Shown: positions 1 through 49,300 of the stretch, one piece after another | How positions within the stretch are numbered: the stretch's first letter is position 1 | How the letters are laid out: every line of letters begins with the position of its first letter | Assembly (NCBI RefSeq): GCF_963676685.1 | Contig: NC_092346.1 | Coordinates: forward strand, 53,196,001 to 53,260,000 | Length of the DNA: 64,000 bases | From: Mytilus edulis | Lineage: Eukaryota | Direction of reading: 5' to 3' | Made by a program: the position numbers and the translations under genes | The notes under the pieces: model-generated | What the model was told of the DNA's origin: nothing | Databases searched by the model: none | The model's input: the letters and a program-made list of their open reading frames with translations, nothing else

Positions 1-1111
1 TTAGATTTAGTGAATATTCGAAATCTTAGTCTACAAAATAATTATTTAGGAAGATTTCTTAGTACTCGCAGTTATAAAATGTCAAGTAAATATAGCAGGC
101 TTGAGATTATAGATTTGTCGATGAATGGTATTGAAAAACTAGCATTTATATTATTCAAGGGACAGCCAAATTTAAAATATATCAATCTGAATGACAACAA
201 GCTGCAAAAGGTTACTTTTGATGTTTCGCAATTCGAAAAGTCTTCAGTATTTGGATTTATCAAGCAACAATTTTACGACATTAGACGGGAAAGCTATGGC
301 AATGTTCGATGGCCTGTCTAAAAATACCCATTTCACAGTTAATTTACAAAAAAATGCATTGCGATGTACCTGCAACACACTACCGTTTTTAAAGTGGATT
401 TCCAAAACAAAAGTTGATTTGCTGCTTAACGAAAAGTGTAATTTAGAAGATGGGACCGGTTTTAGTTTCTACCCCATAAACTCACTAATACAGCAAGTAC
501 AGAAGGGGTGTACGGCATATACGACCTTAGTCATAGCGTTGTCTGTAGGTTTGGCAGTCATGCTGACCGTTATTGTTTTGGCTTTAGTGTATAAATACAG
601 ATGAAAACTTCGATACATGTTTTATCTTGCCAAAAGTTAACTCTATGGTTACAAGGGTTCCACAGACGACGGTGAATACACTTCCGATGCTTTTATTTCG
701 TACTGTGATGATGATAAAGCATTTGTATTAAAAGATTGCATTGCAAACTTAGAAACTGAAGGGAATGCTAAATTATGCGTGCACCAACGTGATTTCTTAC
801 ATGGCCAAGAGATAACAGTCAATATTACAAACGCTATTCATGACAGCAGAAAGACGGTTTGCATTATAACAAGAAAGTTTTTTGAGTCGCACTACTGTAT
901 GTTTGAATTCAACATGGCCCGTATGGAAAACATTTATTCTCGAGATGGAAGGAATATCATTTTCCTAGTATTCCTGGAGCAAATTCAACCAAGAGAAATG
1001 CCACTTATGATGCTCGAACTTATAGAGAAACAATCGTACATCGAATATCCAAATGACGTAGAAGGAAATATTGTGTTCTGGGACAAAATTCAAGAAGCTA
1101 TTCATTCATGA
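1..1111 (+). pseudogene. Toll-like receptor pseudogene, 5' end outside window (LRR - LRRCT - TM - TIR, intronless)
   Basis: LRR motifs (LEIIDLSMNGI, LKYINLNDNKL, LQYLDLSSNNF), LRRCT (NALRCTC...FLKWI...C), a TM helix (TLVIALSVGLAVMLTVIVLALV) and a TIR domain (DAFISY...LCVHQRDF...SRKTVCIIT...YCMFE...FWDKI). The frame is broken by a frameshift near 230-240 and by in-frame stops at 602-604 (YKYR*KLRY) and 638-640. Confidence 0.9.
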
Positions 1112-1436
1112 CATAACTATTAAAGGTTATTTCTGGTCCCCTCTTTTCTACCTGTCGGACCCAAGTAAAACGGGTTGTGTAAGTTGAATTAATTATGCAA
1201 TCAATTTAGGTATTTCATACATATCTCGACAAAGAGATTTCCTCGCCTATAACATATTATGAGTCTCAAATTAAGGATCCTAATGATTTTCGAGAAAGAA
1301 AAACTCTAGAAGCATAATCCTTGTATAGCATTGGCTGGTTAGCTTTATTTAAGTCTTTTTTTTCTTCTTTTTGGTAGTTTACACGGCACAGTGTATTGAT
1401 GAGAACTTTCTTTGAATCCTCATATGATCCGCTCTT

Positions 1437-2286
1437 AAGCTTTGCATTTTTTTAATTTGAACAGGAGCATAGCTCTAGACTAAGAACGGTAAGTGACTCA
1501 CTGCCAAATTTCAAACTGTGTCTGCGAGTAATGGTTCTTAGCATTGTATATAATTTTTATCAAATTTGGATCAGGAAGCTGAAAAAGGTTAGAGTGCGAA
1601 AACGAAATAGGTACAGACGGATGGTAGGTTAAGAGTGTCACTTTATGTCAAACTCATAAATCGAAGATAAACTGACTAAAATGGCTAAAAATTAAAAAGA
1701 CAAACAGACAAACAATAGTACACATGACACAACATATAAAACTGAAGAATAAGCAACACGAACCCTGCAAAACACTGGGGGTGATATCAGATGCTCCGAA
1801 AGGGTAAGCAGATCCTGTGACGCCCGTTGTGTTGCTCGTGTTGTAACAAATCCGGTAAACAGTCTAATTCGGTAGGTCACATTCGTGAAAAGGGCAGGTG
1901 ATTGTAGTTACTACGTAAAGAATCCGATATCATAAGTGAAACGGTCATCACATAACGGTCAACCAACTCGTGATGGCGTCCGTAAAATTTACGAAGGGAT
2001 GATTTCAACTTCACCATTTGGAACTCTTGGTTGAAAAGCTTCCATGTGAGCAGCAACCTTCTATCAAGAAAATCATGATGGGAAGCTTTGCAATTTTTTA
2101 AGTTGAACAGGAGCATAACTCTAGAACGGTAAGTGACTCACTGCCAAAATTCAAATTCTGTCTGCGAGTAATGGTTCTTAGCACCGTATATAGTGTCTTC
2201 AAATTTTAATCAGGAAGCTTAAAAGTAAGAGTGCGAAACGAAATAGGTACAGACGGATGGTAGGTCAAGAGTATCATTTTATGTCC
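1437..2286 (+). repeat. ~210-bp diverged direct repeat pair (about 1437-1650 and 2083-2286) bracketing the retroelement fragment
   Basis: Both copies read AAGCTTTGCA...GAACAGGAGCATA...AGAACGGTAAGTGACTCACTGCCAAA...GAAATAGGTACAGACGGATGGTAGG...TTTATGTC. Confidence 0.75.
1651..2083 (-). mobile_element. 3' fragment of a Penelope-like retroelement
   Basis: Minus-strand translation SHHDFLDRRLLLTWKLFNQEFQMVKLKSSLRKFYGRHHELVDRY resembles the C-terminal region after the RT of mollusc Penelope-like elements. No RT core is present. Confidence 0.55.
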
Positions 2287-3411
2287 AAATTAACTACGAC
2301 TGGGTCATACAAATCAGAAGTATAAATTGACAAACAATGAGCTGTGCAAATATTATTCGTATTAATCTTTCTGTCTTAATTTAAAAGGTTATTGTAATTG
2401 TGTTGTTTTACATATGAAATAAGATTCAATCCTTCTATCTTACATCTGCTCTGTGTATATTTTGACGGCATAATAGTTAAAGAGAGGCGAAGGGACATTC
2501 AAACTCACAACGCCATTCCTTAAAAGAAAAAGATAAACAAACAACAGTGCAAAAAACACAACATTATTTAAAAGAATTTATATATTGATGTACACAATAT
2601 ATAAAATCGACCCATGCCGGAATTAAGGACAACATCAAAAATTTAATGTAGGATAACAAAAAAATGAATTCACATAGTTTTTTCACTGACCCAACCTCCT
2701 CTCAACTTAATTTCAAGTGGCAAAAACTGATTGACCCATATGGATATATATTCTATGTTATCAGAGTATACGTTTTGTGATCATGGGACCTGGTTTTTTT
2801 TCTAAACAGTGTATGTTAGTTCTGTATATTGACTTTGACATCACTATTTAAATAAATATTGGAAAAGGTTATGTGTATTGTTGGTATGCATAAAAGAAGT
2901 CACTTTTAAATTATAATTTTATAAACACTACAGTCAGCAAGGATTCTGAATTTTTCATCCGCCCACTATTGGCAGGGATAAATAGTGGGTATGTGGTTTT
3001 TGCTTTGCTCAAATAAATATATAGCAGTTCATTGTTTCATATATAATAGCTTTTAACTAAATAGTTGTCCTTAGAAATGTTTCGTGATGACAGGGCAGTG
3101 CATCTGTGCTAACTGAGGAGAGAGGGAAATGCACAATACTAAATGAATGTCATGATCATTGTGATATGATCTTTGTAATTTCTATTCAATGTATGTTGTC
3201 TAGTGTTGACCTCTGTCATATGTTTCTACTACCTCAAAAACTTTATATAACTTTCAAGTTTTCCAATACTTTCGACAAAAAATGACTTTCCGAATGATAT
3301 GATGGCTTTATTTTTAAAACGTACAAACATGTTAGGGCCGAACTTAAATCCGTATTTTTCAATTTGTAAATCAATGAAAGATCAATAAAATTTGCAGCGA
3401 CCCAGCGGTTG

Positions 3412-5015
3412 TAAATAAACTCAACATAGATACCAGGATTTAAATTTTGTATTTATGCCAGACTCGCGTTTCGTCTACAAAAGACTCACCAGTGACGCTA
3501 AAATCCAAATAAATTAAAAAGGCCAAATAAAGTACAAAGTTGAAGAGTATTGAGGATCAAATTCCTAAAATGTTTGCCAAATACAACTAAGGTAATCTAT
3601 TCCTGAGGTATAAAACCCTAGTATTTCAAAAATTCTAAAGTTTTGTAAACAGTTAATTTATAAATATGACCATATCAATGATAATTCAAGTCAGCACAGA
3701 AGTTTTGACTACTGGGCTGGTGATACCCTAGGGTTGTAATAAATAGTTGTCAAAGGTGCCAGAATTATAATTTAATACGCCAGACGCGCGTTTCGTCTAT
3801 GTAAGACTCATCAGTGACGCTCATATAAAAATATTTATAAAGCCAAACAAGTACAAAGTATAAATATCAGAGTAAATAGATCTTGTTATGCTGACAAGTT
3901 TTGCAGTTTATATTTAAGACTTTTACCTGAGCACCTGGGCAAAATTGGAAAAATTTGTTTCAGGTCCAATTACTCAAAGGTAGTTGACAGTTTTTTTCTG
4001 ATTTTTTCAGGAACTATTGATCTAATAGTGCTAATCATTTTTGCAATTAACTCTTTTACATTTGTTTTCATGATAACAGCCACTTATGGCCTAAAAAAAC
4101 TATTTCTTGAGCAATAACACAAAAACTGTCAACAGATTTTTCTCCAATTTTCTGGGAGGAATCATCTTGTCATACTGATCATTTTTGCAATTAACACTTT
4201 ATACCTAGCTCCTATGTATAATTGAAATTATACAATCAAAACTTCAGGGGGCAATAGCAGATTAAGTATGATTGCAATCAAGAAAACTTTCCACCAAAGA
4301 CAATGATGTGAACAAATACAAGTCATCATACAACCTTCAACTAAAACAAAACCAATCTATACATGAAGTTATGTTTTAGAGGCAAAAAAGCAAAATTTAT
4401 AAAACTGTTGAGGGCATAAGCATTAAAAGGAGCTTATCCAGATCCATAAAATTGTCTTAGATTACTTTTGTGGGAAATAGTCATATATGTCCAGAGGACA
4501 CTATGCTCTGCCTACAGTATCATGTTTATGTTCAGAGAACCCTGATATCATGATTATAATTCAAAAAGTTCATTTCATAATGAATGGTTCTCAAGCTTCA
4601 ATTTGATGTAAAGACATCTTTATGTTTTCCCTACTTTCACCAAATCTTTAGCCCGATAACAGAAAATCAGGCACACAGAAAACATACTGATTCTCATACA
4701 AATAAACTCATCATAGATACCAGGATTGAAATTTTATATTTATGCTAGACGAGTTTTTCGTCTACAAAAGACTCATCAGTGACACTCCAACCAAAAAATG
4801 TTAAAAAGGTCAAATAAAGTACGAAATTGAAGTGCACTAAGGATCAAAAGTTCCTAAACGTTTTGCCAAATACAGCCATGGTAATCAATTTCTAAGGTAG
4901 AAAAGCCTTAGTATTTAAAAAATAAAATGTTTTGTTAACAGTTAATTTTAATTTAATATAATTATGAACATATCAATGATAACTCAAGTCAACACAAAAG
5001 TGCTGACTATTAGGC
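3412..5015. repeat. Cluster of dispersed SINE-like repeat copies (about 3412-3730, 3740-3860, 4700-5015)
   Basis: Shared AAATAAACTCA-CATAGATACCAGGATT...TTTCGTCTACAAAAGACTCA-CAGTGAC...CCAAATACA...CATATCAATGATAA blocks. Confidence 0.6.
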
Positions 5016-5782
5016 TACAACTGCAGGTGGGCAATATATATAAAGCAGTAAAACTCTTCCCATAGTAGGGCATTGGTTTTTACATATGAAGCCACTTTTG
5101 GTTAGAATAGGGATGTTAAATCTAATACTTGTGTAGAGAGAGTGCCAAACTCTCTGCACATTTTCCTTGCAACAACTCTTTTAGGGGTCTGTAGGTAACC
5201 TGTTGCAAGGCAAAATTTCAGTCGCTATTCAAGACCCCCTGATTTTCCAGTGGCAGTCCTTATTTCTCCAACTTCTTCTTGGACGTTCGCTATCACAGGA
5301 CCTAATGATTGCACTTTTTGTTAATTTGTTTTTGTCCTGAACATGCATGCAATATTTGCCACTGGATGTAATGCAATCAGCAATCAATCAAATTCATCAT
5401 GACATTGTTGTCTCACCTACATCTTTACCATGTCCATTTTGTCAATATCAGACCAAACACAGTATAGTAAAAAGTTATGGCTTGCAAAAAACAATAAGTA
5501 ATGTTAAGCTTACATAAAAACATTTTAATTAACAAAACAATTGAGAATTATATAAATATAATAATTATAATGTAAAAATAAACATTTCAGGTAGAAATAA
5601 AAATTGGCAAGATTTATCAAAATGCATATAATGTATACTATTTAAAATCTTATACTCTTTTCATTAATATCATCTCTTGACTGTGATCCTAGCGGAGAAC
5701 TGCATTCATTTCTCAAATTCATCTGCTATATATATTGTTAAACCATGTGTATCAAATGTGTTGCATTGTTCCCACTGAGTTG

Positions 5783-22000: not shown

Positions 22001-25000
22001 TCGACTGAGGGTCATGTTTCTATACTGTGATAGTCTTTCTGTCATAGTAGTGGTTAATTGATAAGTATGGTAACACATAGCAAAAAGTACACTCATATTA
22101 CAATGATAATTGAAAACATAATTTCTCTTATTTGGACAAGTGGCCATTGTTTTTGTTCAAACGGTATATTTTATCATTTACAAATTTGAATTACCATGTT
22201 GTTTTCTTTCCATTTTAGGTGTGGAAGTAGGAACAGTATGGGCCACAAGAATGGAATGCTGTCGTGATGGCATACACAGGTATTGGATGTTCTCATTAAT
22301 AATGCTAAAGCAAACAAGAGTGCACACACTGAAATGTCTGGCCTTCTTTACTAATCATTGATATTATGTTGATAGTCCTAAGTATAAAGCTTTATTACAA
22401 CTGTCACATAAACGTTACATTAACCAAGATAACTAAACAAAGACCAATGAACCATGAAAATGAGGTCAAGGTCAGATGAACCATGTCAGGCTGACATGAA
22501 CAGCTTACAATGCTTCCATAAAACAAATATAGTTGACCTAATACTTATAGTTTAAGAAAAATAGACCAAAACACAAAAACTTAAGACTGAGCAATGAACC
22601 GTGAAAATGAGGTCAAGGTCAAATAAAACCTGCGCGACTAATATATATATCATAAAATATTTCCATACACTAAATAAAGTTGACCTATGGCGTATAGTAT
22701 CAGATGAAAAGACCAAAACTCAAAAAACTTAACTTTGACCACTGAACCATGAAAATGAGGTCAAGGTCAGATGACATCTGTCCGCTAGACATGTTCACCT
22801 TACAATTATTCCATACAACAAATATAGTAGACCTATTGCATAAAGTATGAGAAAAATAGACCAAAACACAAAAACTTAACTATAACCACTGAACCATGAA
22901 AATGAGGTCAAGGTCAGATGACACCTGCCAGTTGGACATGTACACCTTACAGTCCTTCCATACACCGAATATACTAGCCCTATTGCTTATAGTATCTGTG
23001 ATATGGACTTGACCACCAAAACTTAACCTTGTTCACTGATCCATGAAATGAGGTCGAGGTCATGTGAAAACTGTCTGACGGGCATGAGGACCTTGCAAGG
23101 TACGCACATACCAAATATAGTTATCCTATTACTTATAATAAGAGAGAATTCAAAAAATCTGAACTTTTTTTTCAAGTGGTCACTGAACCATGAAAATGAG
23201 GTCAAGGACATTGGACATGTGACTGACGGAAACTTCGTAACATGAGGCTTTTACTGTAAAAGCACATATTTTCGTGGGGGATTTAATTTCGTTTATTTTG
23301 TGGATAAGAAGTATCCACGAAATTAAAACCCCAACGAAAATTTAACTGTAGATTTACATTATTTTATGATCTGACTAAATCTTATTGACATTATATAATT
23401 GATGAACATAAATGCAGACAATGAAATAAATAGGTTAATTGATTAGACATCGATATTCAAAGGTTTCCTTTAAGTCAGATGATAATCCTAATCCTTTGTT
23501 TGTACAGTAATTAATAATGATCAAGAACTGTCAATCAATGTCATTTAACAGTCTAATGTGTCTGTAATGCCCTCAAGTCGTAATACATTTATCACACAAT
23601 CATTGTCCTTGAATAAAACATCAAAGGTGTGTAACAGCCAATTAGCGTATGCAGGTTACAACACTTGATTAGTGCTCACTGTTACTATGAAATGCAATTA
23701 TTGATTTTTCCCAACGGCAAAAGTTCACATCAGTTTTATTGAGTATTGTCAATTATAAAGTGACATTTGTATAATTTTTTTCTAAACTTAAAAACCACGA
23801 AAATTAATCCCCACGAACTTACTTTTGGATACAAAACCACGAAATTTTAACCCCACGAAAATTAATGTTTATACAGTATATACAAAGTATGAAGCATCCA
23901 GGTCTTCCATCTTCTAAAATATAAAGCTTTAAAGAAGTGAGCTAACACCGCCGCCGCTGGATCACTATCCCTATGTCGAGCTTTCTGCATCAAAAGTTGC
24001 AGGCTCGACAAAAATCATTTGAAAATTTTATGTTTGTTTATTAGAATGTTAGAAGTAGAAATGTTGAAGTTTAGAGCTAAAGTGAAACTCCTTACAAAAT
24101 CCAATACAAGGACCACACTGAGATTTTGATGCTCAAATTATTGCTTGATTTTCAAACAAAATATGGTTCCTAGCTTAATATGTGTTTGGGTTACTTGTAT
24201 GATACCTCACCTGTATCACCATACTAACTTCCATCATTTATCATCCAGACAGTCAGAATATTATAGAAATCCTTTAAGAATGGTAAATTTATTTCCATTT
24301 GTTCCTATCACATTGAAATTAAGATTTGGGTGAATGGAGATTAAAGAAATTTCCAAATCATCTGAAATCAGGTCAGTCAGGCTATGGCAAGCAAACCTGT
24401 TTAATTTTGATTTTGGCTTAAATATTAATAAATCTTTGTGGAGTCCATCAACTCCCAATTTCAAAGAAAAGATTATGAAATAAAATAATTTGGTTATAAA
24501 TTATGAATTCAAATCTTGAATTATTATTAAAGGCAGAACATGTAAAGCACACAATGAAATCAGTATGTTTAATTTGTTATATAAAAATAAAAGGATGTGG
24601 TAGAGTCACCAATGAGACAACTCGACACAAGAGACGGGTCAACATTTTTAATTAATTCTCCATAGGCGACAATGGTAACGTTTTCCTCCATTGCTCAGTC
24701 CATATCGTTTACTTGAACATGTAGGATGGCTCATATCGAAGCTGATACATTTATACATGTTTGGTTAAATTTTCGGGGTGGCAAGTGAGATTACTTTTTT
24801 CGCAATTTGCTGGACCCCGGAAGATGGTGAAAAATGTCACTCTCCACATGAAATAATCCCAAAATTCTAATCATAAAACTCAATAAAAAAATTGTCCTTT
24901 CTAATAATTTATTTCAGGTCAAATCTACATATTTCTTTTCTCATCACATCAGCTCTATAAAACAGTTCTTATTGTTCATTTATGTCCATTTTTAAAATCA

Positions 25001-28000
25001 CAGCATCCACAATTGTATGGCGGACTTATATTGTTTTTTAATTACGTCATCTGAGTTCCTCATCTCAAGGTCTATTAGGGATCCTGACCCATATTAGATC
25101 AGCAAATGTCAGATTCCACTTGTATTGCAGTATGAATTCCATCGGTAGACCTTTTCGAACAATTCTGTGAAGTTTTTTTCCGCATCTGAAATAGAATAAG
25201 TTAATTTTTAGTATTTTTAAGTAAGCATGCTTATTACTGTTCCTTATATCTTTTAGTAGAAAAAAGCACAAAATCCATATGTTATCAATCCACAATTTAG
25301 ACATTAATTAAGACTTTTCATAGCTTAAAGTGCCATTCAACAAACCTTCATTACCTTACTGACTTTATTAAAATCATCATGTTTAGATGATAAAGCATGA
25401 AAATATTGTGTTTTTTACTGTAAATAAGGTAAATTTAAGGATTTTTTCACTCAGAAAATAATGTTTTTGATATTTGTTTCTTTCAAATAAGGAATAGAAC
25501 ATTTTTATTTTTTTATAACTGTTAAGATCATTCACAGACCATTCTAAAACAGGTTTTAGTTTTAAAATCCATCAAGCAATAACCATTTTAGAGTTCTTTT
25601 TGTGTGAGTGTTCAAATAGGGAAAAATGGTGCTTTTCTTTGGTAAAGATAACATTGTGACGTCATCGCTTTTGTGACGTCATGACTTTATGGTGTCATAA
25701 TTTAGAATTGTACAAACATAACAGAGTGTGTATTTATTCAATAATGAAAGGGAAAAGGAAAAGAAACCAATATAAGGTTGGTAACCAAGCCCATCTATTG
25801 CGTTTTGTATCCCTAACAACAGATCAAGATTGTGGTGTTAATAATAGTGTTGCTCCATCTACAGCTCCATCTACACCTCCATCTACACAGGTTTTAAAAA
25901 ATTTATCTATGCAAGTTTCACCTGCACCACCTAAATTTAAATTATCTAATTCCGCTACAGATTTGGCAACTAAAAACACCACAGAATCTGTCTGGTTACC
26001 CCGCCTTACAGAAAAGGAATTCAAGCTGTACTCAAAAGAGAGTTACGATAAAAAATCTTATGTAGCCCCCCAAACTGAAAAATGTGCGACTACAGTCAAA
26101 CTACTAAGACCGCATAAATTGTCAGATGATTATTTAGATGAATATTTAGAGGATAAAAGTACTGAAAATAGAACGGTAGATAGAGATCTTAATATTTTAA
26201 TGATCAATAGTCTTATAATATGTCATTTAAATAAAAGTCCAAAGTGTGTTGTTCCACATTTTGAACTGGTACAAGAGACTCAATGGGGTCTTGGTTGGAT
26301 TTGGAAAATGAAGTGTACCAATTGTAAATTTATTTCAGAAAAATATAAACTATTTAGAGAAATTGACACAGGACGTGCTGGTCGCAAGAGTGCTACAATT
26401 AACTATGGGTTTCAGACTGGCGTGATAAACTGTAATATTGGTAATGATAGCGCGCAACTACTTTTAACTAGTTCATGTATTCCTCCTATGTCGAAAGGAA
26501 CAATGCAGAGAATAACAAATACTGTTTGTGACAAGGTTGTTAAACTTGCGGAAAATGAAACCGAACAAGTGGTTGAGAGTTTCAGAAAGAGAAATGAAAC
26601 CTTAGGGTTAAATAAAAATAGTCCTATAAAATTGCAAATGGATGGTACCTATCAGAGTGTGCATATAAAAAGTAGGCATAAAATGGGACAAAATGCATCA
26701 CAAGTCATTGGTATTGCCTGTGAAAATGAAACTGACAATCATGATATCATTGGTTTTCACCTTGTAAACAAACTTTGCTGGGTTGGTGCATGGTTACGCG
26801 GTAAAGGTTATGACATTGAATGTCCTAATCACGAGTACTGCACATCAAATACAAATAGGCATGATCCTTTGAGTGAGAAGGATCTTGGGTATGAAATAGG
26901 TAAAAAAATTGCTAAACTTGATTTACTTGTGGACTATTGTACTACTGATGGGGATGCAAAAAGTGTACAAGGTTTACAAGAAGCCATGCAAGAAATATTT
27001 GACCCTTTATGGTCAGTAAATAGACTGGCAGATACTATACACCGGGGTCAAAGTCAGTTCCGTGAGGTATTGCGAGCAAAATTTAGTGTCGGTATGTTCC
27101 CTGGAGCTACAAAGGCTCAGAGGAATGATATTAAAATAGCTTTTGCCAATGATTTAAAATTACGTTCGCATGGTATAATGAAATGTTTATTTGCAAAATA
27201 TAATGGTGACCGACAACAAATTTCAAAATGTTTGCCACGCATTGTTAAGTCTGTAGTGAATTGTTATAGTGGTAATTGTAGCGATACGTGTAGATGGAGC
27301 ATAACACTATGTAATGGTGGTATAAAAACTAGTTGGTGGTACAAATCTATTAACCTTAGCAGTCATGGTTTACAAAATGGGTCTTTGAAACCAAATAAGA
27401 CTGACAAATTATTAATAGAATCATTGTTAGAAATGAAACTGTCTCAGACCGCATTAAATCAGATGCAATTTTTCAGCAATACAAATAAGTGTGAGTCCGT
27501 CAATAGGACAATTTCTACATACCTACCGAAGAATAAGAATTTTTCTCGCAATGCCTTAGGCCGTGCATCTGCAGCAGTCTTGAAAGTCAATAATAAACGG
27601 GATGTTGCATTGGCTAAGACCCTAAAAGCTGTAGGTTGTGGTCTGGGTAGAAAGTCTCGTGCTGTAGTGGCTCTGAAAAAAATACGTAAACGTGAAATAT
27701 ATGATTGTGCATATCAAAAAAGTTTACGTGTCAAATTAAACAGGTTAAAAGCTCGTAAAAAACAGGCTATCGATTTCTTGTTAAACAAGAGAGTGCGAAA
27801 CAGGTTGATTAGTGGATATAAAAAACATCAGTTAGAACCAAAGCTATGTCAGAATTCAAGTCCGAAAGAATTCGTTCCACAGCCAGGTTGTAGTTCATGG
27901 CCAGATTAACATTTATATTAAAAGGTTACACAATATGGTTTTCTTTCAGCCTTTCAGGAAGCATATGTAGTTATTTATTTATTTACAGAGAATACTAAAC

Positions 28001-31000
28001 ATCTTATATTATATTAAAACAAACACTTTTCAGGAATATATGAGCATGATATGAGTTAGTTGTGTTTTTTTTAAATTAAAAAGTTTGTTTATTTTAAGTT
28101 TGTTATGAAAATGGGATAATGGTCCAAGACACTGAAATAAACCTTGTATCAGACAAAAAGACCACTTCATATCTCCCAATGCAATGCATCCAGCCACAGT
28201 ACATGCATTTATTGGAAAACACATACCTTGAAACAAAATTATAAACAAAATAAAACCATGTAAAATGAATATTACAACATTAGGTCATTCACAGTTTGCC
28301 TTTGTAACTCGATGTCATATTTGGATTTTTTCCTTTCTGTTATTTTTTCTTTTGTTTTTTGTTAACTTATTTAATTAATGACTGTCATACTTTGTTCATT
28401 GATTTGTCTCTATGTTTCACTTTCATTTAGTTCTCTACCGCATGTTTACTTCCTGTGATCACCTGTTGATTGAATGACCCAGTTTTCTGACACAGTAATG
28501 AAACCATCAAGAGTTACTCCCCTTGCACTGTAAAAATTAGTAAACACTGGCGAAAAAAACCACATAAATGTTTGACTGAGCTTATAATCTTGCATAAACA
28601 TGTTTGCCATGTTTGTTTCAGTGTCTTGGGGGTATGAGGGTGGGCTTTTTTCCCATTTTCGTTTTTTACTTGTGTTAAAAACTTGTATTTTCAGAGATGA
28701 TTAATGTGGAGGTAAAATGTGCAAGGTGCATATGTTTACTACAAAATCATAACAAACCACAATTTCAGATTCAGCATGCAGTTAGTATAGTTTGTGCCAT
28801 GCACAATATGTGTGGTGCATTGGTGTGCAGCTACACATATTTTTCTTTGATTGTTAATCTCCCGAGGTTCTAAAACAATATGGTCTGTATTCACACACAA
28901 TGCATTATGACAAAGGTGTGAAGCATCTAAATTTTTGGCTAAATCAGTAGATTTCAATTGCAAAATTTTTGCTAAACGTGCAACATTCATTTTAGTACGT
29001 TTGGCATTTGGGTATGTGACATTGATCATCCCTAGAATATAATTATTTCTCCTCTGAGTGGCCCCAGTCCAAATAATGCATGCCCCATTTTTTGCCTCTT
29101 CACTGTTTATAAGTATAAAATTGGTATATTTTTGATAAAAATCTAAATTATTGGTAGCCATTTTGTATTCTTTTTAATCAAATAGCACTAAAAGAGTGTA
29201 ACTGACCTCGATTTCAGCAGCTGCCATCCGAAATTGTGATCATTGAACCATGAAACACTCCAACACCTTTGAAATAATAGTTCACAATTTGGGTCAACAT
29301 TTTTAATTAATTCTCCATAGGCGACAATGGTAACGTTTTCCTCCATTGCTCAGTCCATATCGTTTACTTGAACATGTAGGATGGCTCATATCGAAGCTGA
29401 TACATTTATACATGTTTGGTTAAATTTTCGGGGTGGCAAGTGAGATTACTTTTTTCGCAATTTGCTGGACCCCGGAAGATGGTGAAAAATGTCACTCTCC
29501 ACATGAAATAATCCCAAAATTCTAATCATAAAACTCAATAAAAAAATTGTCCTTTCTAATAATTTATTTCAGGTCAAATCTACATATTTCTTTTCTCATC
29601 ACATCAGCTCTATAAAACAGTTCTTATTGTTCATTTATGTCCATTTTTAAAATCACAGCATCCACAATTGTATGGCGGACTTATATTGTTTTTTAATTAC
29701 GTCATCTGAGTTCCTCATCTCAAGGTCTATTAGGGATCCTGACCCAGACCAAATGGCGTAGAAGTTTTGATAGCGCCATCCTTGTTATTTCCCCTGATTT
29801 TTATCATAGATAGATTTTTTTTGTGATTTGTAGGCCTACAGTAGCAGGAATCCATGCTGGACAAGATGGATCATTTTCTATTGCTCTCTCTGGTGGATAT
29901 GAAGACAATATTGACTTGGGAGATTGTTTTACTTACACAGGAGAAGGTTATTACATCTCTGTTGTTTCTGTCGTTACTATAAAAGTAAATTTCTTAAATG
30001 ATTTATGTAATTAAGGCCTAAGTATAAACTGCCTCTTATGGGCAGTTTATTTTTTGATAGACCATGTTTTAATGTGACAACTTTCGTAAGCAACATATAA
30101 ACAACATAGCAGCATCAAATTATGTCACACATACATGCATATACAAACCAGAAAAATTATTTACCATGTTTTACAGGTGGCTAATGTTGATAAACTAAAA
30201 TTAAAGGAATAATAAAGATTATTCACTTTTTCCCTTGTCAAATTTTAAATGGATTTACTTTGATGCCCTCAATTTGAACCCACTTACAAAAAAGGTTTGT
30301 AAGCTATTCTGACCAGAAGACACATTTTTTCGGATAAAATGGGAAAAATACGGTGTAATTGAAATAATGGACAATGACTGTTACTTCAGTGTCAAGGTAC
30401 AGACACCATGCAGAATGCTATAAACTAATTAGAAATCAGTAATTGATTAAATTCATATTGATAAAAGGTATAGGTCAGTTAGACAGCAACACAACAACAA
30501 CATAAAAACAGAGAAGACCTCTACAGGTCAACAATGCAATATTTGTAACATGCTTCTTGGAAGAAATTTTGGTAGTTATCTAGTAATATTGACCATAATG
30601 GCATTAAAAGAGTTATAATATTAGTAATTTTATTTTGCAGGAGGCAGAGATTTGAAAGGGACAGCTAACAAACATAAGGTAAAATATGGTCTTTAACTCT
30701 CCCTACTTAGAATACTGAGGTCTTTTGAAAGTCATACTCCTACTATTAAGTGTCGGGGTAGTGTGTGCTTGTTTGTTAGTCCATCATCCTGCACATTGTA
30801 AATTAAAACATCTAAAGCAGTTAGATAAAAGAAATTGACGAGTATTAATGGCCAGCCCAGCTCAACAAGTTCTATCTTTGAAGTCTTTTTTAATTTGAGA
30901 AAATTATGTCAACCTTTTTTTTTTAGCAACTACTCCTGAAAACTTAATTTATCATTTTTTGACATTGTTCCAATATCTTAAGGTTGAAAATGCAAAAATT

Positions 31001-43300: not shown

Positions 43301-46300
43301 AACAAATGTCCTATAAAATGCCTCTGAAAAATTATAAAATGTTTACACATAAAACATTTTGAAACTGTAGATTTTTATTTATTCAGAATCACAAAACTTA
43401 TTTTTTATACTTTAAAGAAAACAAATTAACAATATTTAAGTGGAAACTGTTCATCAAAAGCATTAATGACATGAGGAATATGTTGAAGGCTGTACTGACC
43501 TATAATAATAGTTTACTTTTTACCAATTGTGACTTCGAGGGAGAGTTGTCTCATTGGCACTCATACCAATGCCAATGTCAACAGTGTTAATTAAATTATA
43601 ATATATTGCTATTATTTTGTTGAGTGTATTTCCTGTAGTATATATTTTTTTTATTACACATGTTACATACTGTCTATGTACAAATTTATTGCATGTTATT
43701 ATTTATAATAATATTGTTTGTATGATTTATATGCCCTCCTGGGGCCCGTGAATATTCTATTCTATTCTATTCGTACCACATCTTATATCTATCTACATGC
43801 TCACATGTACATCTTATATCTATCTACATGCTCACATACATGTATGTGTCTATATAACAAATTTTGAGATAATCAAAATAGAGCATGTTAAAATTAAATT
43901 TACATTACAAGGTAACAGTACCTCTTTAGCTGCTGTAAATGCCACACCAGAAAAAGCATATCTGTCCACTATCAATGTAGTCCCGGCTTCTAACATGGAT
44001 TTCATTTTAGGCCTGAAATACAAGTGAACTAATAGATTCAACAAATTGTAGCTTTGACCTATATTCAAGGATGTTTAATAATATCTAACGTAGTAAGAGA
44101 TACAATGTTAATTTTCTCATGCAATTTCTGTTTGAAAATAAAACAAGGTTAAATTTTTTTTTTTAATTCAGACACAAAAGGTATCTAAACATCCACAAAA
44201 TATATGGTCTTAAAAGGGTTAAATGTAACAAGCTGATACATGTACATGTTGGCACTATAGTGTATGGCTAATCCTAAAATATTTCAAAGAACATGAACCT
44301 ATGGGTCTGACCACCTTAACTTTCCATGTGCTCAAATGGATGATTATATACCAACCTCATGAACTTGTTTACATTCACACATTATTTATCATAAAATGCT
44401 GTTGGTCAACAATGTACATGTATGTATGTACATTTGTACATGTTGGATGCTATGGAGCAGGACATGTATAATGCAACATTTGATGAACAGAAATATGCTG
44501 CCAGGAGCCAATAGTAATTGACCAAATAAAAATGCCATACAGCCTAGTGTTTGTAAAAATTATATATAAACAAACATATTTATAACATTTTATAACTAAA
44601 AAGAAATCCAAATGTATATATTTCATTTATTTCTAATAAGAAGCATACATTTTTTATTTTTACTTTACCAGCTGCTTCATATTGCTGGTCTTAATTGATT
44701 TTTTGGGTGGATTTACAAAAACAATGTATTTGTACTGTTTTCCTAATGGGTTTTTTCATCGGCATTTGTTTTAAAACAATCATTGTAATGTAATCATTGT
44801 AAATAAGTTTAATGTAATTATTCAGCTTAGCTTTGGGTGCTGTGATTAGCAATTAAACAATTTTCTATTCTATTCTGTACATGTATTATGTTTTTACTTA
44901 ACCTTTGTAATTAGCAAACCTATATTAAAATTGAAAAAAATGTAACATGCAAATGTCAAACTTACACCATTTCCCATCTGTTGGCTGAAAATAGAAGATG
45001 AACTGAATGGTCTTCTATTTCACATTTGTTACTAAGGTAACCATCAATCATTTTACCAATTGTTGTTGTTCTGTCTACAAAGAAAACAATTCAAACATTT
45101 CATCAAGCTGAAGTTTTATAGTTACAGTAGCCTGTTAGTAAGTAAAATAGTTTATTAAAGTGTCACATATTAAATATTTGTACATATAGATATACAATGT
45201 ATCTTCTCTTACCACCATGGAACCATCTTAGTGTTTCTATCACAATTTGTTACATATGAGATTTTCTATACTGCAGTAACATCTTGGATATCAATTATTT
45301 CGATTCTAATAGGACAAATACAGCAATTATTTTGGATGAAAGCACTCTAGGTGGAGGCAAATATTTGCCGTTACCATAAATAAATGCACTATCAAATAGG
45401 AGTAAAAGGATGGAGCAAACTGAATTAGTGACATGCTTAAACTACCGGTATTTACCATAACGTATTTAGATAGTTTTTGGAGGAAATTAAATGATAATTT
45501 ACTATTTGTCTTATATGTAAAAAAAAAAAAAAAAAGGCTTATTTGGGTATACATTTACAATTAATTCTCCATAGGCCGTAATGGTAACGTTTTCCTCCGT
45601 TGCTCAGTCCATATCGTTTACTTGAACATGTATGATGGCTCATATCGAAGCTGATACATTTATACATGTCTGGTTAAATTTTCGGGGTGGCAAGTGAGAT
45701 TACTTTTTTCGCAAATTGATGGACCCCGGAAGATGGTGAAAAATGTCAGTCTCCTCATGAAATAATCCCAAAATTCTGATCATAAAATTCAATGAAAAAA
45801 TTGTCCTTTCTAATAATTTATTTCAGGTCAAATCTACATCTTTCTTTTCTCATCACACCAGCTCTATAAAACAGTTCTTATTGTTCATTTATGTCCATTT
45901 TTAAAATCACAGCATCCACAATTGTATGGCGGACTAATATTTTTTTTAATTACGTCATCTGAGTTCCTCATCTCAAGGTCTATTAGGGATCCTGACCCAT
46001 ATTGAAATTCATACTTCTGATTTTTCCAAATATTTTTATGTGATCTTCATCGGTATAACATTCTGAATAAATCTGTGTATTTTTGTCCATTTCTGAAAAA
46101 AAATAAAGTTGTTTTAGCACTATAAGGCAATGCCACTTTCGTCGCTATATTCATTTATTTTGAATACAATGTGTTTGTATAATTAATTTCTTCCAGAATA
46201 CCTTCACTAGTCAAAACAAGGACAAAACTTCTGATTATAACCTTTAATTACAATACACAGACCCTGTTAAAGCATTCTATAAAATTTTCTTGTGCCTTAC

Positions 46301-49300
46301 AGTGCATTTTGACAGAGAAATTATGCAAAAATGAAGATTTTATAAAAAAACCAACACCAAAATAATTATTCTTACTAGTGGAAATCTGGTATTTAAAACT
46401 GTGGAAAGCACTCTTAACTACTTGGAAAGTCATCTTTATCATATAATTAGAGTGCAATATAGTGCAAATTTTCAAAACTTGTCCTTTCACATAATTCTAT
46501 TTGAGAAAAAATGTTTTTAACATGTATTTCAGTGAAAACCTTTTATTAGTGAGAAATCCACATGAGGTTTTAAAGGAAACATTGTGACATCACATGTATT
46601 ATGGCGTCATTAAATAACGACAGATCAAAATAGAGCTAAATATAGTTTGCAGTGTTACGTGAGAAACAGTTGCCGCAAGATTTAACTCGAAATATTGAGT
46701 CGAAACGATCTGTAACTAAGCCTTTTCATTTAATACCAAGACCATAGCAACAGTTTTCATATTTGCATATTTTTAACATACCGACTGTAATTTCAATTGC
46801 ATAAATACCATAAATAAACAATTTAGAGCTTGCCTAATAAAGCAAAATGCTTACCAGTTATTCAGGACTTTTTAAAACCTCTAGTTTGCCATCTCAGGCT
46901 AAAAAGTAATGATATGTCTGGAACTGAAATAAGACAAAAAAATTACTCAGGCTGTGTTATCATTTGATTTAAATACATAAGTACTATTGAGAGAGAAAAA
47001 TCTAATTCTTGGAAGTTTAATCACAAAGAAAGACAAATGCTTCTCCCTTGTGGCTTAGTCACCTTCATTTAAACCTTTTATTTTAGAAGCAATGGGTAGT
47101 AGCTAACTAGCTTAATAGTTGAATAGGTGCAGAAATATTGTTTTCAAAAAGGTTTGACCCTCCCCCTTTTTCACTGAGAAATGACAATATCTATTGTTTT
47201 GCTCAAGCGCATTAAAAATATTAGTTCATGATTTTCTTAAAACATGTACATGTTTTTTCTGTTTTTTTTGCATATGATATCTACTGACCAGGGGTCAAAT
47301 CATTGGATAAAAGCACATGCGATGATGTATCTCACTTTACTCGTATGAAGTGTGTTATCTCCCTTGATTATCAGGTATTCCTGTAGACCGAAGTGATAAT
47401 TACATAACAAAGACTATATTGTGTCATGTTTACTTACAATTTACTGTAATAATATTTAAAAGTTGTTTCTTGCCTTTTTCAATATAGTAAACAAATTCCT
47501 TTCGGATCTCTCGGAAGTAAACAAAGTGATGATTGTGCCTAAAAAAAGTGTTCAGCCCCGTGCCAGTAATGCATTTTAAAAGCAAAGTTTCATTGAGTTT
47601 TTGCTGATCTTTATCAATAATATTTATCTTAAACCATTTATAATAACTAGGTATAAATAAAAAACTACTAACCATCATTTTCGGTGGTGTACAAGGTGAA
47701 ATCATCCATAAATCAGCCTGAAAACTTCTGGAAGTAAGCTTCTAATTTGGGTATACATTTACAATTAATTCTCCATAGGCCGTAATGGTAACGTTTTCCT
47801 CCGTTGCTCAGTCCATATCGTTTACTTGAACATGTATGATGGCTCATATCGAAGCTGATACATTTATACATGTCTGGTTAAATTTTCGGGGTGGCAAGTG
47901 AGATTACTTTTTTCGCAAATTGATGGACCCCGGAAGATGGTGAAAAATGTCAGTCTCCTCATGAAATAATCCCAAAATTCTGATCATAAAATTCAATGAA
48001 AAAATTGTCCTTTCTAATAATTTATTTCAGGTCAAATCTACATCTTTCTTTTCTCATCACACCAGCTCTATAAAACAGTTCTTATTGTTCATTTATGTCC
48101 ATTTTTAAAATCACAGCATCCACAATTGTATGGCGGACTAATATTTTTTTTAATTACGTCATCTGAGTTCCTCATCTCAAGGTCTATTAGGGATCCTGAC
48201 CCATTTCACATTTATACCTCATTTTAGCAATCGTCTGTTTATGTTTCCTTGTTGTGATGATTTTCGCTCTCACAATCCTGTATTTGCCTGTAAAATGCTT
48301 ATATTCTTAGGTCATCGTTCTATGACATCTGGCACCTCATTCATGAAAAAGCATATGACGTGGGAGTACGATCAGAACAGCCCTGGCAATATATTCATAT
48401 TTTACCACGGGTGTGTACTCATAGTGTTTGAAGGACGTCATGTTAGAATCTATGTTGTACTAGAAAATTATGAAGTTAAGGACGTTTACACAAATAAATT
48501 ACTGTAAATTCAGAAATTATTGCATGTATTCATTATAGTGATTTTATCATTTTAGACTAAAATGTGGATCTAATTTTTTCTTTCGATATTCAGAAAAATC
48601 CTGTTTGATTCGAAATAATTCAAAACTGACTGATCTAAGGGGGGGGGGGGGGGGGCTCCAGTCATGCTTCAATGATTCCCTATATAATCAACCAAATTTT
48701 TCCCACAAAAGGGGGGGGACCGGAGCCCCCCCCCCCCCCCACTGGATCCCCCTATGATAGTTCAAGCGGGCAGATAATTCTCAGGTCAACTTGGACTGAT
48801 TTCCAAATAGTGATAAGGTGCATAGCTCACTGTGCAGTATTGGTTTTGCCCATTGTTGAAGGCCTATCAGAATACAGAATGACTAATTCAGTGTCAATTA
48901 ATGTAAGGAAAAAAATAGTTTTATATTGGTCAGGACATTAGGCAGAACTATGTAAGCAGTACAAGATCCCAAAGTTTATGTCAAATTTTGAGGACCCTCA
49001 TCAAAAATTTGCTCATAGAGGTGTGCAAGTAATCACATAATCAAAAATTTTAAAATAAAGCGGCAAACTGATGTTCGCCTCAAACTACCTGGAAAACGCA
49101 TAGCTTCCGTTTTAATTCCCTTTTCATTCAAAGCTGCAACAAGTTTTTTACATTGAGTTGTTTTGCCACTATGATCACATCCTTCAAATACAATAAGAGC
49201 TCCTCTAACTTCAGCTGTCGACGGCATCATCAATGTTCTTTTTAAATTTTGCGCCAAATTTATCGGAACACTTCTGACTTTTACCATAGACTGAACAAGC

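What the first reader, a model, noticed from the sequence alone, without database searches (positions are those of the whole stretch)
28739..29161. I-PpoI-like His-Cys-box nuclease carried as the second gene of a cut-and-paste transposon
Seen: a 140-aa intronless ORF starting 130 bp inside the right repeat, convergent with the transposase, with an intact [12 protein letters not shown]...E....N..R..C motif. Established: this motif is the metal-binding/active core of His-Cys-box homing endonucleases from nuclear group I introns. Inference: it could cut empty donor sites or repeat junctions to trigger homing-like copy restoration or recombination between the direct repeats. That would parallel the role of TnpB in IS200/605 elements and could explain the identical repeats. 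It is a compact, unstudied nuclease candidate.
Basis: partly seen in the sequence, partly recalled or inferred. Interest (0 to 1): 0.78.

Follow-up and report, generated by a model that had tools for sequence, protein, structure and literature searches.

The report
KolobokP transposon's I-PpoI-like nuclease gene
The 140-residue gene is a real, intact I-PpoI-like nuclease, but it belongs to KolobokP, a family of mussel and other invertebrate DNA transposons described in 2022, so it is a known kind of element whose nuclease has still not been tested at the bench.

Summary
Window 28739-29161 (-) is an intact 140-aa ORF matching Pfam PF05551 (E 3.5e-13). All His/Cys/Asn positions that align with the I-PpoI core are invariant or nearly so across 76 homologues. 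The AlphaFold model (pLDDT 94.4) has I-PpoI as its best solved-structure match (Z 8.2).

The ORF lies in a 5,111-bp element (24636-29746). The element has 456-bp identical terminal direct repeats, GG..CC ends, a convergent 742-aa DDE transposase and 3-4-bp target duplications (9 of 9 copies). The genome also holds tandem multimers and repeat-less INT-INT arrays. This is the architecture of KolobokP (Kojima and Bao 2022, PMC9587614), reported from Mytilus, including the I-PpoI-like nuclease and a cleavage-induced recombination model. The finding is therefore already known.

Added here:
- The nuclease is under purifying selection between two families (dN/dS about 0.18).
- The two repeats of each copy evolve in concert (0-4 differences within copies, 0-17 between copies).
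- RNA reads show an abundant spliced minus-strand RNA whose main intron removes the whole nuclease ORF.

What the nuclease cuts remains untested.

The parts
24633..24635 (.). Left target-site duplication (GAC). The preceding A at 24632 may belong to it, giving a 4-bp AGAC.
   Evidence: the same 3 bases flank both ends. 9 of 9 copies have a 3-bp duplication preceded by A.
24636..25091 (+). Left long terminal direct repeat (LTDR), 456 bp. It begins GGGTCA and ends TGACCC(A).
   Evidence: exact 456-bp identity with 29291-29746; the ends of all copies fall here. Read, the LTDR's own ends form an inverted repeat, 6 bp perfect and 12 of 17 imperfect.
25092..29290 (+). Internal region (INT), 4,199 bp, carrying both genes
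   Evidence: INT is also found tandemly joined without an LTDR (period 4,195, 4 bases missing at the joint).
25681..27909 (+). DDE transposase, 742 aa
   Evidence: PF20700 E 1.2e-58, residues 174-535; acidic residues, a DxxH motif, a Cys-rich stretch and an NTNKxE motif are conserved across four family members at 35-81% identity.
28739..29161 (-). His-Me finger (His-Cys box, I-PpoI-like) nuclease, 140 aa: the finding
29162..29290 (-). Conserved 129 bp upstream of the nuclease ORF. It contains the splice donor at 29207/29206.
   Evidence: 85% identity to the second family against 56% for the intergenic spacer..
29291..29746 (+). Right LTDR, 456 bp
29747..29749 (.). Right target-site duplication (GAC)
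27673..29206 (-). Main minus-strand intron (GT..AG). It removes the whole nuclease ORF. An alternative donor at 28391/28390 keeps the ORF.
   Evidence: joint 27672/29207 with 7 RNA reads in X23, plus contigs in X1 and X3. Joint 27672/28391 with 1 read in X23 and 1 contig in X1. One search gives the splice-site sequences.
27527..27672 (-). 146-nt exon of the minus-strand RNA, antisense to the transposase ORF
   Evidence: depth 833-1,993 in X1 against 10-50 beside it; only 80 first-look DNA candidates in the genome.
25186..27526 (-). Second minus-strand intron (GT..AG)
   Evidence: joint 25185/27527 with 6 RNA reads in X23, plus contigs in X1 and X3..
25092..25185 (-). 94-nt exon of the minus-strand RNA, continuing into the left LTDR
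   Evidence: joint 29746/25092 (the LTDR-INT border) with 6 reads in X23, and depths of 1,401 and 1,278 in X1 and X3.

Best explanation
The ORF is the nuclease gene of an intact, very young copy of a KolobokP DNA transposon (LTDR-INT-LTDR). Shown: the protein is an I-PpoI-type His-Me finger, two-zinc nuclease fold with every catalytic and metal-binding position kept, and it is under purifying selection. The element is mobile as a unit, with 3-4-bp target duplications. It also exists as (LTDR-INT)n multimers and INT-INT arrays, and the two LTDRs of each copy evolve in concert. Inferred (about 0.4 on its own): the nuclease does not choose insertion sites. It makes a double-strand cut at a fixed site in the element's own DNA, either inside the LTDR or at abutted LTDR ends. 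Host repair from another LTDR (in the same copy, on the sister chromatid or in an array) then homogenises the LTDRs, duplicates LTDR-INT units and restores the composite structure that LTDR excision erodes. Transposition itself is done by the DDE transposase acting on the short inverted ends of the LTDRs. Nuclease output is probably limited by splicing, because the main minus-strand RNA splices the ORF out. The confidence given (0.85) is for the identity of the gene and element; the mechanistic part stands at about 0.4.
For: Identity of the protein:
- PF05551, E 3.5e-13.
- I-PpoI chains are the five best PDB sequence matches to the single protein, best E 0.015, and the best matches to a 76-sequence profile, E 4e-9.
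- C28, H82, C89, E98, R106, C109, C115, H118 and C128 are invariant. S81, C84, H94 and N103 are at least 90% conserved.
- AF2 model pLDDT 94.4, pTM 0.87.
- Best structural match is I-PpoI 1a73_A: Z 8.2, rmsd 3.8 A, 114 residues aligned. Next is I-HmuI at Z 5.7. The Foldseek top four hits are all I-PpoI.

Selection: dN/dS is 0.16-0.20 between two families (dS about 1.0; Fisher p 5e-12).

Element:
- 456-bp exact repeats.
- Eight full-length copies at 97-100% identity, plus one with an insertion and one truncated copy.
- Target duplications in 9 of 9 copies.
- Arrays of period 4,655 and 4,195.
- A second family, 76% identical in DNA, has the same layout and 462-bp repeats.
- All of this matches the KolobokP description (PMC9587614).

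Concerted LTDRs: differences within a copy are 0, 1, 0, 0, 4, 1, 0, 0, 0 in nine copies, against 0-17 between copies (0 only where one LTDR of L001/L002 or of L005/L006 matches one of the other copy). L008 has 0 within and 14-17 to all others.

Constraint on the LTDR: it is 76% conserved between families, against 56% for the intergenic spacer.

Splicing.
Against: No cleavage assay exists, here or in the papers seen; a 2026 review passage says the model awaits experimental confirmation. No target site was identified. Concerted evolution of the LTDRs could arise without the nuclease, from unequal crossover in multimers or from one-LTDR circles. Within the family, dN/dS is 0.5-0.85 on very few changes, as expected for decaying copies, so it says nothing about function. 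Foldseek gave no hit at E <= 0.001. The paper notes that some KolobokP families appear to lack the nuclease, so it may be dispensable. The transposase's best Pfam model is labelled Mutator-like, and its placement in Kolobok was not tested here.
Confidence: 0.85

Rival explanations
1. The nuclease is part of the transposition chemistry itself. For example, it might linearise a circular LTDR-INT or abutted-end intermediate, or make the second-strand cut that the DDE enzyme does not make.
For: The LTDR ends GGGTCA and TGACCC would form a palindrome when abutted. The paper reports excision footprints reminiscent of copy-out-paste-in circles and raises cleavage at abutted ends. The nuclease is kept under purifying selection together with the transposase in families down to 35-39% protein identity.
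Against: No LTDR-to-LTDR joint (29746 to 29291) was listed among the reads laid, but only RNA or RNA-like runs were laid. Non-autonomous elements and solo LTDRs move without encoding it, though it could act in trans. Other Kolobok lineages transpose without such a nuclease (paper).
Confidence: 0.25
2. Restorative homing, the reader's TnpB-like idea. The nuclease cuts the empty donor site after excision, so that repair from the sister copy puts the element back.
For: It would parallel TnpB/IscB in IS200/IS605. The element seems able to excise, since INT-INT joints with 4 bases missing are read as LTDR excision footprints.
Against: The nine insertions examined lie in different flanks that share only a 3-4-bp duplication. 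A protein-guided nuclease with one specificity cannot recognise them all. A review passage makes the same point.
Confidence: 0.05
3. The protein is a sequence-specific DNA-binding factor or a selfish passenger with no benefit to the element, and its nuclease activity is irrelevant or lost.
For: His-Me finger folds have become pure DNA binders elsewhere: NFI and Smad MH1 domains are the next structural matches, at Z 4.4-4.5. The main RNA isoform discards the ORF. Some KolobokP families seem to lack it.
Against: The catalytic His82 is invariant and Asn103 is kept in at least 90% of 76 homologues. In a binder these would be free to change. dN/dS is 0.18.
Confidence: 0.1
4. The repeats and arrays are assembly artefacts, or the element is an LTR retrotransposon that captured two genes.
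For: Direct terminal repeats, 3-4-bp duplications and repeat pairs that are identical within a copy resemble LTR elements. The minus-strand RNA runs from LTDR to LTDR.
Against: At least nine dispersed copies share the same ends on seven chromosome-scale contigs. The ends are GG..CC, not TG..CA. Read, no tRNA-primer-like site or purine tract lies next to the repeats. There is no reverse transcriptase. INT-INT arrays lack the repeat. The introns are kept in the DNA copies.
Confidence: 0.02

Closest known systems
KolobokP DNA transposons (Kojima and Bao, Mob DNA 2022, PMC9587614)
   Same: LTDR-INT-LTDR layout. LTDR of about 450 bp (456 here) with its own short inverted ends and 5'-RR..YY-3' termini. 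3-4-bp target duplications. [quoted passage not shown] (LTDR-INT)n multimers, and INT-INT joints missing 3-4 bases. Reported from Mytilus galloprovincialis and M. coruscus.
   Different: Nothing structural differs. I could not see the supplementary family list, so I cannot say whether this exact family is among the 228 listed. The paper's main text has no transcript analysis (0 occurrences of 'RNA-seq' and 'promoter'; the 'splic', 'transcri' and 'express' hits shown concern other topics). It has no occurrence of 'concerted' or 'homogeniz'. Both were looked at here.
I-PpoI, the His-Cys box homing endonuclease of a nuclear group I intron
   Same: ββα-metal core with the aligned pairs S81/S97, H82/H98, C84/C100, C89/C105, H94/H110, E98/E114, N103/N119, C109/C125 and H118/H134. 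Best structural match, Z 8.2 over 114 residues. Similar size (140 against 162-163 aa).
   Different: About 18-20% identity. It is encoded in a DNA transposon, not in a self-splicing rDNA intron. Its target is unknown. Dimer formation and cleavage are untested.
Bacterial composite transposons and IS26-type translocatable units
   Same: A gene-carrying segment bracketed by two copies of a shorter mobile unit in direct orientation. The short unit can move alone. One-repeat circles are proposed as intermediates (paper discussion).
   Different: Here the transposase lies in the middle segment, not in the flanking units. The flanking units are non-coding. The host is an animal.
   Same: An accessory nuclease carried by a transposon beside its transposase and thought to aid the element's persistence.
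   Different: TnpB is RNA-guided by the element's own end, so it can follow any donor site. This nuclease is protein-guided and has no visible way to read variable flanks.

Membership tests
KolobokP | [quoted passage not shown] | tested here: met
   456-bp exact repeats at 24636-25091 and 29291-29746. 462 bp in the second family.
KolobokP | Each LTDR has short terminal inverted repeats, and the termini are 5'-RR and YY-3' | tested here: met
   GGGTCA... and ...TGACCC: 6 bp perfect, 12 of 17 imperfect, ends GG/CC (read).
KolobokP | Short target-site duplication (3-4 or 4-5 bp) at the outer ends, without strong target specificity | tested here: met
   9 of 9 copies. Duplications are GAC, ATT, TTT, GTT (three times), ATC, CAT and TAT, each preceded by A.
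KolobokP | [quoted passage not shown] | tested here: met
   The same convergent pair is found in families at 68% and about 38% nuclease identity.
KolobokP | (LTDR-INT)n-LTDR multimers, and INT-INT joints with a 3-4-bp micro-deletion | tested here: met
   Arrays of period 4,655-4,656 and 4,195. The joint lacks 4 bases. LTDR first-look candidates number 1,372 against 80 for an INT segment (these are lower bounds). Solo LTDRs were not separately classified.
KolobokP | The transposase falls in the KolobokP clade of the Kolobok superfamily | not tested
   No Kolobok reference sequences were at hand. Pfam's best model is PF20700, labelled Mutator-like. The DxxH motif, Cys-rich stretch and final E motif are present, as the paper describes for Kolobok and related superfamilies.
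His-Cys box (I-PpoI group) His-Me finger nucleases | ββα-metal motif with the catalytic His and the metal-binding Asn | tested here: met
   H82 and N103 align with H98 and N119 of I-PpoI. H82 is invariant and N103 is at least 90% conserved.
His-Cys box (I-PpoI group) His-Me finger nucleases | Eight conserved Cys/His forming two zinc sites | tested here: inconclusive
   C28, C84, C89, H94, C109, C115, H118 and C128 are invariant or nearly so. Five of them align directly to I-PpoI ligands. C115 lies one position off C132 in the ungapped alignment. C28 and C128 lie outside the sequence alignment. Model coordinates could not be inspected for zinc-site geometry.
His-Cys box (I-PpoI group) His-Me finger nucleases | Overall fold like I-PpoI | tested here: met
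   VIA-align Z 8.2, rmsd 3.8 A, 114 residues, model residues 1-131 on chain residues 3-141. The Foldseek top four hits are all I-PpoI but weak (E 0.017-0.056, TM 0.31-0.36).
Homing endonuclease in the strict sense | Encoded in a group I intron or intein, and cleaves the intron-less allele | tested here: not met
   It is encoded in a DNA transposon. No group I intron context. The target is unknown.
His-Me finger nuclease (activity) | Metal-dependent DNA cleavage | not testable with these tools
   Needs a bench assay. None is reported in the papers seen.

The most novel reading that the evidence does not exclude
The nuclease ORF sits wholly inside a conserved spliceosomal intron of an abundant minus-strand RNA that runs from LTDR to LTDR. 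The default product would then be a spliced non-coding RNA (LTDR plus exon segments of 84, 146 and 94 nt), and the nuclease would be made only when the intron is retained or the alternative donor at 28391 is used. On this reading, KolobokP gates its double-strand-break enzyme by splicing, possibly by cell type, as the P element gates its transposase (recalled, not from a call). The Kolobok-like lncRNAs reported in Mytilus (passage of PMC12750733) would be this spliced product.
Probability: 0.3. Interest if true: 0.5.

Novelty: already known. Interest (0 to 1): 0.25.

Why it matters
KolobokP is the only reported animal transposon lineage that pairs a DDE transposase with a protein-guided, homing-endonuclease-type nuclease. 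What the nuclease cuts is still an open bench question. This copy is a good substrate for that test: both ORFs are intact, its repeats are 100% identical, and a near-identical sister copy (reported as 100% identity) lies on another chromosome-scale contig. As a discovery it adds nothing categorical.

The measurements added here narrow the models:
- Purifying selection on the nuclease.
- Concerted evolution of the repeat pair.
- Constraint on the repeat and on the 129 bp upstream of the ORF.
- Splicing that removes the ORF.

Any model must homogenise the two repeats, and nuclease expression is probably rare and regulated.

Tried and rejected
LTR retrotransposon reading. I considered it because of the direct repeats, the short duplications and the within-copy repeat identity. 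I rejected it for these reasons: the ends are GG..CC; read, no primer-binding-like or purine-tract sequence lies beside the repeats; there is no reverse transcriptase; INT-INT arrays lack the repeat; and the introns are retained in the genomic copies.

LTDR as an unrelated MITE that happened to insert twice. Rejected because a second family, 76% diverged across the whole 5.1 kb, keeps the same layout with co-diverged repeats.

Deletion-derivative DNA copies as the source of the 'spliced' joints. The 146-nt exon has only 80 first-look candidates in the genome, and the 40 scored lie at positions of known full-length or array copies. All splice borders are canonical GT..AG with pyrimidine tracts. 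A raw RNA-seq run shows the joints in one read direction only. I did not search for the joined form, because joined sequence is not to be typed.

A transcription start for the transposase inferred from the depth gap at 25248-25559 in X23. Rejected: that stretch differs by about 5% in organism B (8 differences in a 166-nt contig), so reads there fall under the 95% threshold.

Foldseek against the PDB gave no hit at E <= 0.001. The I-PpoI match rests on VIA-align and on sequence profiles.

Not done:
- No search for a nuclease target site. I judged a palindrome scan of the LTDR too unspecific.
- No transposase phylogeny.
- Part 3 of the Results and part 2 of the Discussion of PMC9587614 were not read.
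The list of 228 families and the Mytilus insertion figures may show this very family.
Full report
**The observation**

The minus strand of window 28739-29161 carries an ATG-initiated ORF of 140 codons. It is convergent with a 742-codon ORF at 25681-27909 (+). Its start lies 130 bp from a repeat that begins at 29291.

The ORF matches Pfam PF05551 (zinc-binding loop region of homing endonuclease) at E 3.5e-13, 50.3 bits against a cut-off of 27. The large ORF matches PF20700 (labelled Mutator-like transposase) at E 1.2e-58. H94 ... E98 ... N103 .. R106 .. C109).

**The element**

The two flanking repeats are exact 456-bp direct copies, 24636-25091 and 29291-29746.

A DNA search of the window's own genome (1.37 Gb) returned 12 matches from 1,396 first-look candidates. 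Eight full-length copies, including the window's own, match query positions 237-5347 at 97-100% identity. That range is exactly repeat start to repeat end. One further copy carries an insertion and one is truncated.

In 9 of 9 copies examined the element begins GGGTCA and ends TGACCCA. Each is flanked by a 3-bp duplication preceded by A: GAC, ATT, TTT, GTT (three times), ATC, CAT and TAT. This can also be read as a 4-bp duplication with ends GG..CC.

The whole 5,111 bp therefore moves as a unit, and its long terminal repeats are direct, not inverted. Each repeat has its own short inverted ends: 6 bp perfect, and 12 of 17 imperfect (read).

**Arrays**

A protein search of the genome gave 151 matches, with 150 of 574 candidates scored. 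Of these, 57 are full-length at 92% identity or more, and 55 of those have no stop.

Many copies stand in tandem, with periods of 4,655-4,656 bp (repeat plus internal region) and 4,195 bp.

Fetched arrays show both (LTDR-INT)n and INT joined directly to INT. The INT-INT joint lacks 4 bases relative to the two INT ends.

A second family has 68% nuclease identity and 76% DNA identity over all 5.1 kb. It has the same layout with 462-bp repeats that are 99.8% alike.

Families at about 38% nuclease identity also pair the nuclease with a convergent transposase (35-37% identity) and form arrays of period 4,416 and 4,763 bp.

**What is known**

A full-text search led to Kojima and Bao 2022 (PMC9587614). 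I read the abstract, the outline, Results parts 1-2 of 3, Discussion part 1 of 2, and term passages. They describe KolobokP with these features:
- LTDR-INT-LTDR architecture.
- LTDRs of about 450 or about 660 bp with short inverted ends and RR..YY termini.
- Target duplications of 3-4 or 4-5 bp.
- Solo LTDRs, multimers, and INT-INT joints with 3-4-bp micro-deletions.
- An HHpred match of the nuclease to I-PpoI (1A73) and I-HmuI.
- Presence in Mytilus galloprovincialis and M. coruscus.

They propose that the nuclease cuts in or at the ends of LTDRs and induces unequal crossover or circle integration.

The closest named protein to this ORF is a partial M. galloprovincialis hypothetical protein, 96% identical over 56% of the query.

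Every structural KolobokP feature I could test is met. The transposase's placement in the Kolobok clade was not tested, and Pfam's nearest model carries a Mutator-like label. The catalytic-region motifs are conserved across four family members: two acidic motifs, DxxH, a Cys-rich stretch and NTNKxE.

A search for 'KolobokP' found 2 papers. The second is a 2026 review (passage only), which says the model awaits experimental confirmation.

**The nuclease**

Sequence evidence:
- Against all PDB chains, the single sequence finds I-PpoI as its five best matches, at E 0.015-0.41. The alignment pairs S81/S97, H82/H98, C84/C100, C89/C105, H94/H110, E98/E114, N103/N119, C109/C125 and H118/H134.
- A search of 1.84 billion cluster representatives found 1,051 relatives at E <= 0.001, and 169 at E <= 1e-10.
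- In an alignment of the query with 75 of the 150 relatives listed (chosen by hand for full-length coverage), C28, H82, C89, E98, R106, C109, C115, H118 and C128 are invariant. Y43, R62, S81, L83, C84, H94 and N103 are at least 90% conserved.
- The profile of that alignment hits I-PpoI at E 4e-9 to 1e-6, and nothing else below 0.4.

Structure evidence:
- The AlphaFold2 model has mean pLDDT 94.4 and pTM 0.87. Only residues 137-140 fall below 50.
- Foldseek against the PDB ranked four I-PpoI chains first, but weakly (E 0.017-0.056, TM 0.27-0.36). No hit reached E 0.001.
- VIA-align against 48,161 representative chains gave I-PpoI 1a73_A at Z 8.2, rmsd 3.8 A, with 114 residues aligned over model residues 1-131. 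I-HmuI followed at Z 5.7, then NFI and Smad MH1 domains at 4.4-4.5. Only 11 chains reached Z 2.

The tool warns that Z near 8 alone is not decisive. Taken with the profile match and the invariant residues, the I-PpoI-type assignment is secure.

**Selection**

Between the two families the nuclease ORF has Sd 46-48.5 over 85 synonymous sites and Nd 51.5-56 over 335 non-synonymous sites. This gives dS about 1.0, dN about 0.18 and dN/dS 0.16-0.20. Fisher's exact p on the counts 47/85 and 56/335 is 5e-12.

Within the family there are few changes (Sd 0-3, Nd 1-10) and ratios of 0.5-0.85. That is what decaying insertions give, and it is uninformative.

Identity to the second family, by part:

| Part | Identity |
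|---|---|
| LTDR | 0.76 |
| 5' non-coding INT | 0.73 |
| Transposase ORF | 0.81 |
| Spacer between the ORF ends | 0.56 |
| Nuclease ORF | 0.75 |
| 129 bp upstream of the nuclease ORF | 0.85 |

The LTDR and the nuclease-upstream piece are therefore constrained.

**Concerted repeats**

In nine copies the two LTDRs of one copy differ at 0, 1, 0, 0, 4, 1, 0, 0 and 0 positions. LTDRs of different copies differ at 0-17 positions; the zeros arise only where one LTDR of L001/L002 or of L005/L006 matches one of the other copy. L008 differs from all others at 14-17 positions and L009 at 6-12, yet each has identical LTDRs.

Simple cut-and-paste of a composite unit cannot copy a mutation from one LTDR to the other. 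Some process must therefore regenerate or homogenise the pair. Candidates are nuclease-induced repair, unequal crossover in arrays followed by excision of a monomer, or one-LTDR circles. I cannot tell these apart.

The paper's main text has no occurrence of 'concerted' or 'homogeniz'. Its supplements were not seen.

**RNA**

One look-up found 20 runs from 9 studies that hold at least half of the element's sampled words. None of them is on record as RNA. Two raw RNA-seq runs of a related organism label were also listed.

I laid INT plus the right LTDR on two raw RNA runs and two contig sets. The joints listed were:

| Joint | Evidence |
|---|---|
| 27672/29207 | 7 reads in X23; contigs in X1 and X3 |
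| 25185/27527 | 6 reads in X23; contigs in both |
| 27672/28391 | 1 read in X23; 1 contig in X1 |
| LTDR-INT border | 6 reads in X23; contigs in X1 and X3 |
| INT-INT joint | 4 reads in X23 |

All spliced joints have CT..AC on the plus strand. They are therefore canonical GT..AG introns of a minus-strand RNA, with pyrimidine tracts before the acceptors. All joint reads have the first mate on the plus strand.

The main intron (29206-27673) removes the whole nuclease ORF. The alternative donor at 28391 keeps it.

In X1 and X3 the exon pieces and the LTDR stand at depths of roughly 250-2,000, against 10-50 for the ORF-bearing parts. The RNA label of X1 and X3 is the tool's guess. However, the 146-nt exon has only 80 first-look DNA candidates in the genome against 1,372 for the LTDR. 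DNA copy number therefore does not explain its depth.

The main donor and both acceptors are conserved in the second family; the alternative donor is not.

Two of the conserved sites lie inside the transposase ORF, so their conservation is confounded by coding constraint.

Taken one by one, the LTDR is closed by stops in all three frames, while one frame of each of the 84-, 146- and 94-nt pieces is open.

Nuclease-sense reads over the ORF are few (depth 1.3-4.7 in X23). They cannot be told apart from unspliced precursor.

X24 has little INT coverage. Transposase-sense reads are scarce in X23 (depth 0-1.9).

A 2025 paper on Mytilus (passage only) reports lncRNAs similar to Mytilus Kolobok elements with tandem-like structure, which fits this RNA.

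**Mechanism**

Shown:
- An I-PpoI-type nuclease gene under purifying selection in a mobile KolobokP element.
- Multimers and INT-INT arrays.
- Concerted LTDR pairs.
- Constrained LTDRs.
- Diverse insertion sites.

Inferred: the transposase moves LTDR-bounded units. The nuclease cuts a fixed site in the element's own DNA, and repair from another LTDR homogenises the repeats and adds units (about 0.4).

Rivals:
- A direct role in resolving a circular or abutted-end intermediate (0.25).
- A binder or passenger with no benefit to the element (0.1).
- Restorative homing at empty donor sites (0.05). This is disfavoured because nine insertions share no site.
- An artefact or an LTR retroelement (0.02).

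**Verdict**

The finding is real and correctly identified, but it belongs to a published family that was reported from this genus. I rate it already known, interest 0.25.

An earlier first-stage note of this scan on the same window (s1-832276) describes the element as composite-like. It agrees with this reading and played no part in the evidence.

Noticed in passing
window 25092-29746, minus strand: An abundant spliced minus-strand RNA runs from LTDR to LTDR. It has canonical GT..AG introns at 29206-27673 and 27526-25186 and exon pieces of 84, 146 and 94 nt. The nuclease ORF lies inside the first intron. An alternative donor at 28391 keeps it. The main splice sites are conserved in a second family.
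   Followed up: partly
window 45541-48204: A non-autonomous element with the same architecture lies 16 kb away. Its two ~460-bp direct repeats are 95% identical to this element's LTDR and 99% identical to each other. They flank about 1.7 kb with no blastn similarity to INT and no Pfam-worthy ORF of 80 aa or more. A first-stage note (s1-832400) also flagged it.
   Followed up: partly
window 29823-29950, plus strand: Seventy-seven bases beyond the right end of the element, an open frame matches the SAD/SRA domain (PF02182, E 2.6e-8). It is probably an exon of an SRA-domain host gene, so the element may sit in or beside one of that gene's introns.
   Followed up: partly
window 22422-23230 and 29232-29255: A tandem array of units of about 147 bp (5-6 copies, 75-92% alike) shares a 24-nt motif at 83% identity with the conserved stretch upstream of the nuclease ORF inside INT (family D4). 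It could be chance, or a link between a satellite and this element.
   Followed up: no
window 29647 (inside the right LTDR): In both raw RNA runs, reads (4 in X23, 9 in X24) break at 29647 and continue into the same unrelated 30-letter sequence (table 7). There is no GT/AG at the border. It is probably a truncated LTDR copy, or another element inserted in an LTDR somewhere else in the genome.
   Followed up: no
G000 C10:1.70-1.79 Mb; C2:32.94-32.97 Mb; C1975; C477; C12:58.93-58.95 Mb: Long tandem arrays of KolobokP units. There are at least 17 units of the window's family on C10, in both orientations and mostly INT-INT with period 4,195. Several small contigs consist wholly of arrays of more distant families, with periods of 4,416-4,763 bp.
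   Followed up: partly
window 25681-27909: Pfam's best model for this transposase is labelled 'Mutator-like' (PF20700), while the literature places the family in Kolobok. This is a naming mismatch that could mislead automatic annotation.
   Followed up: no
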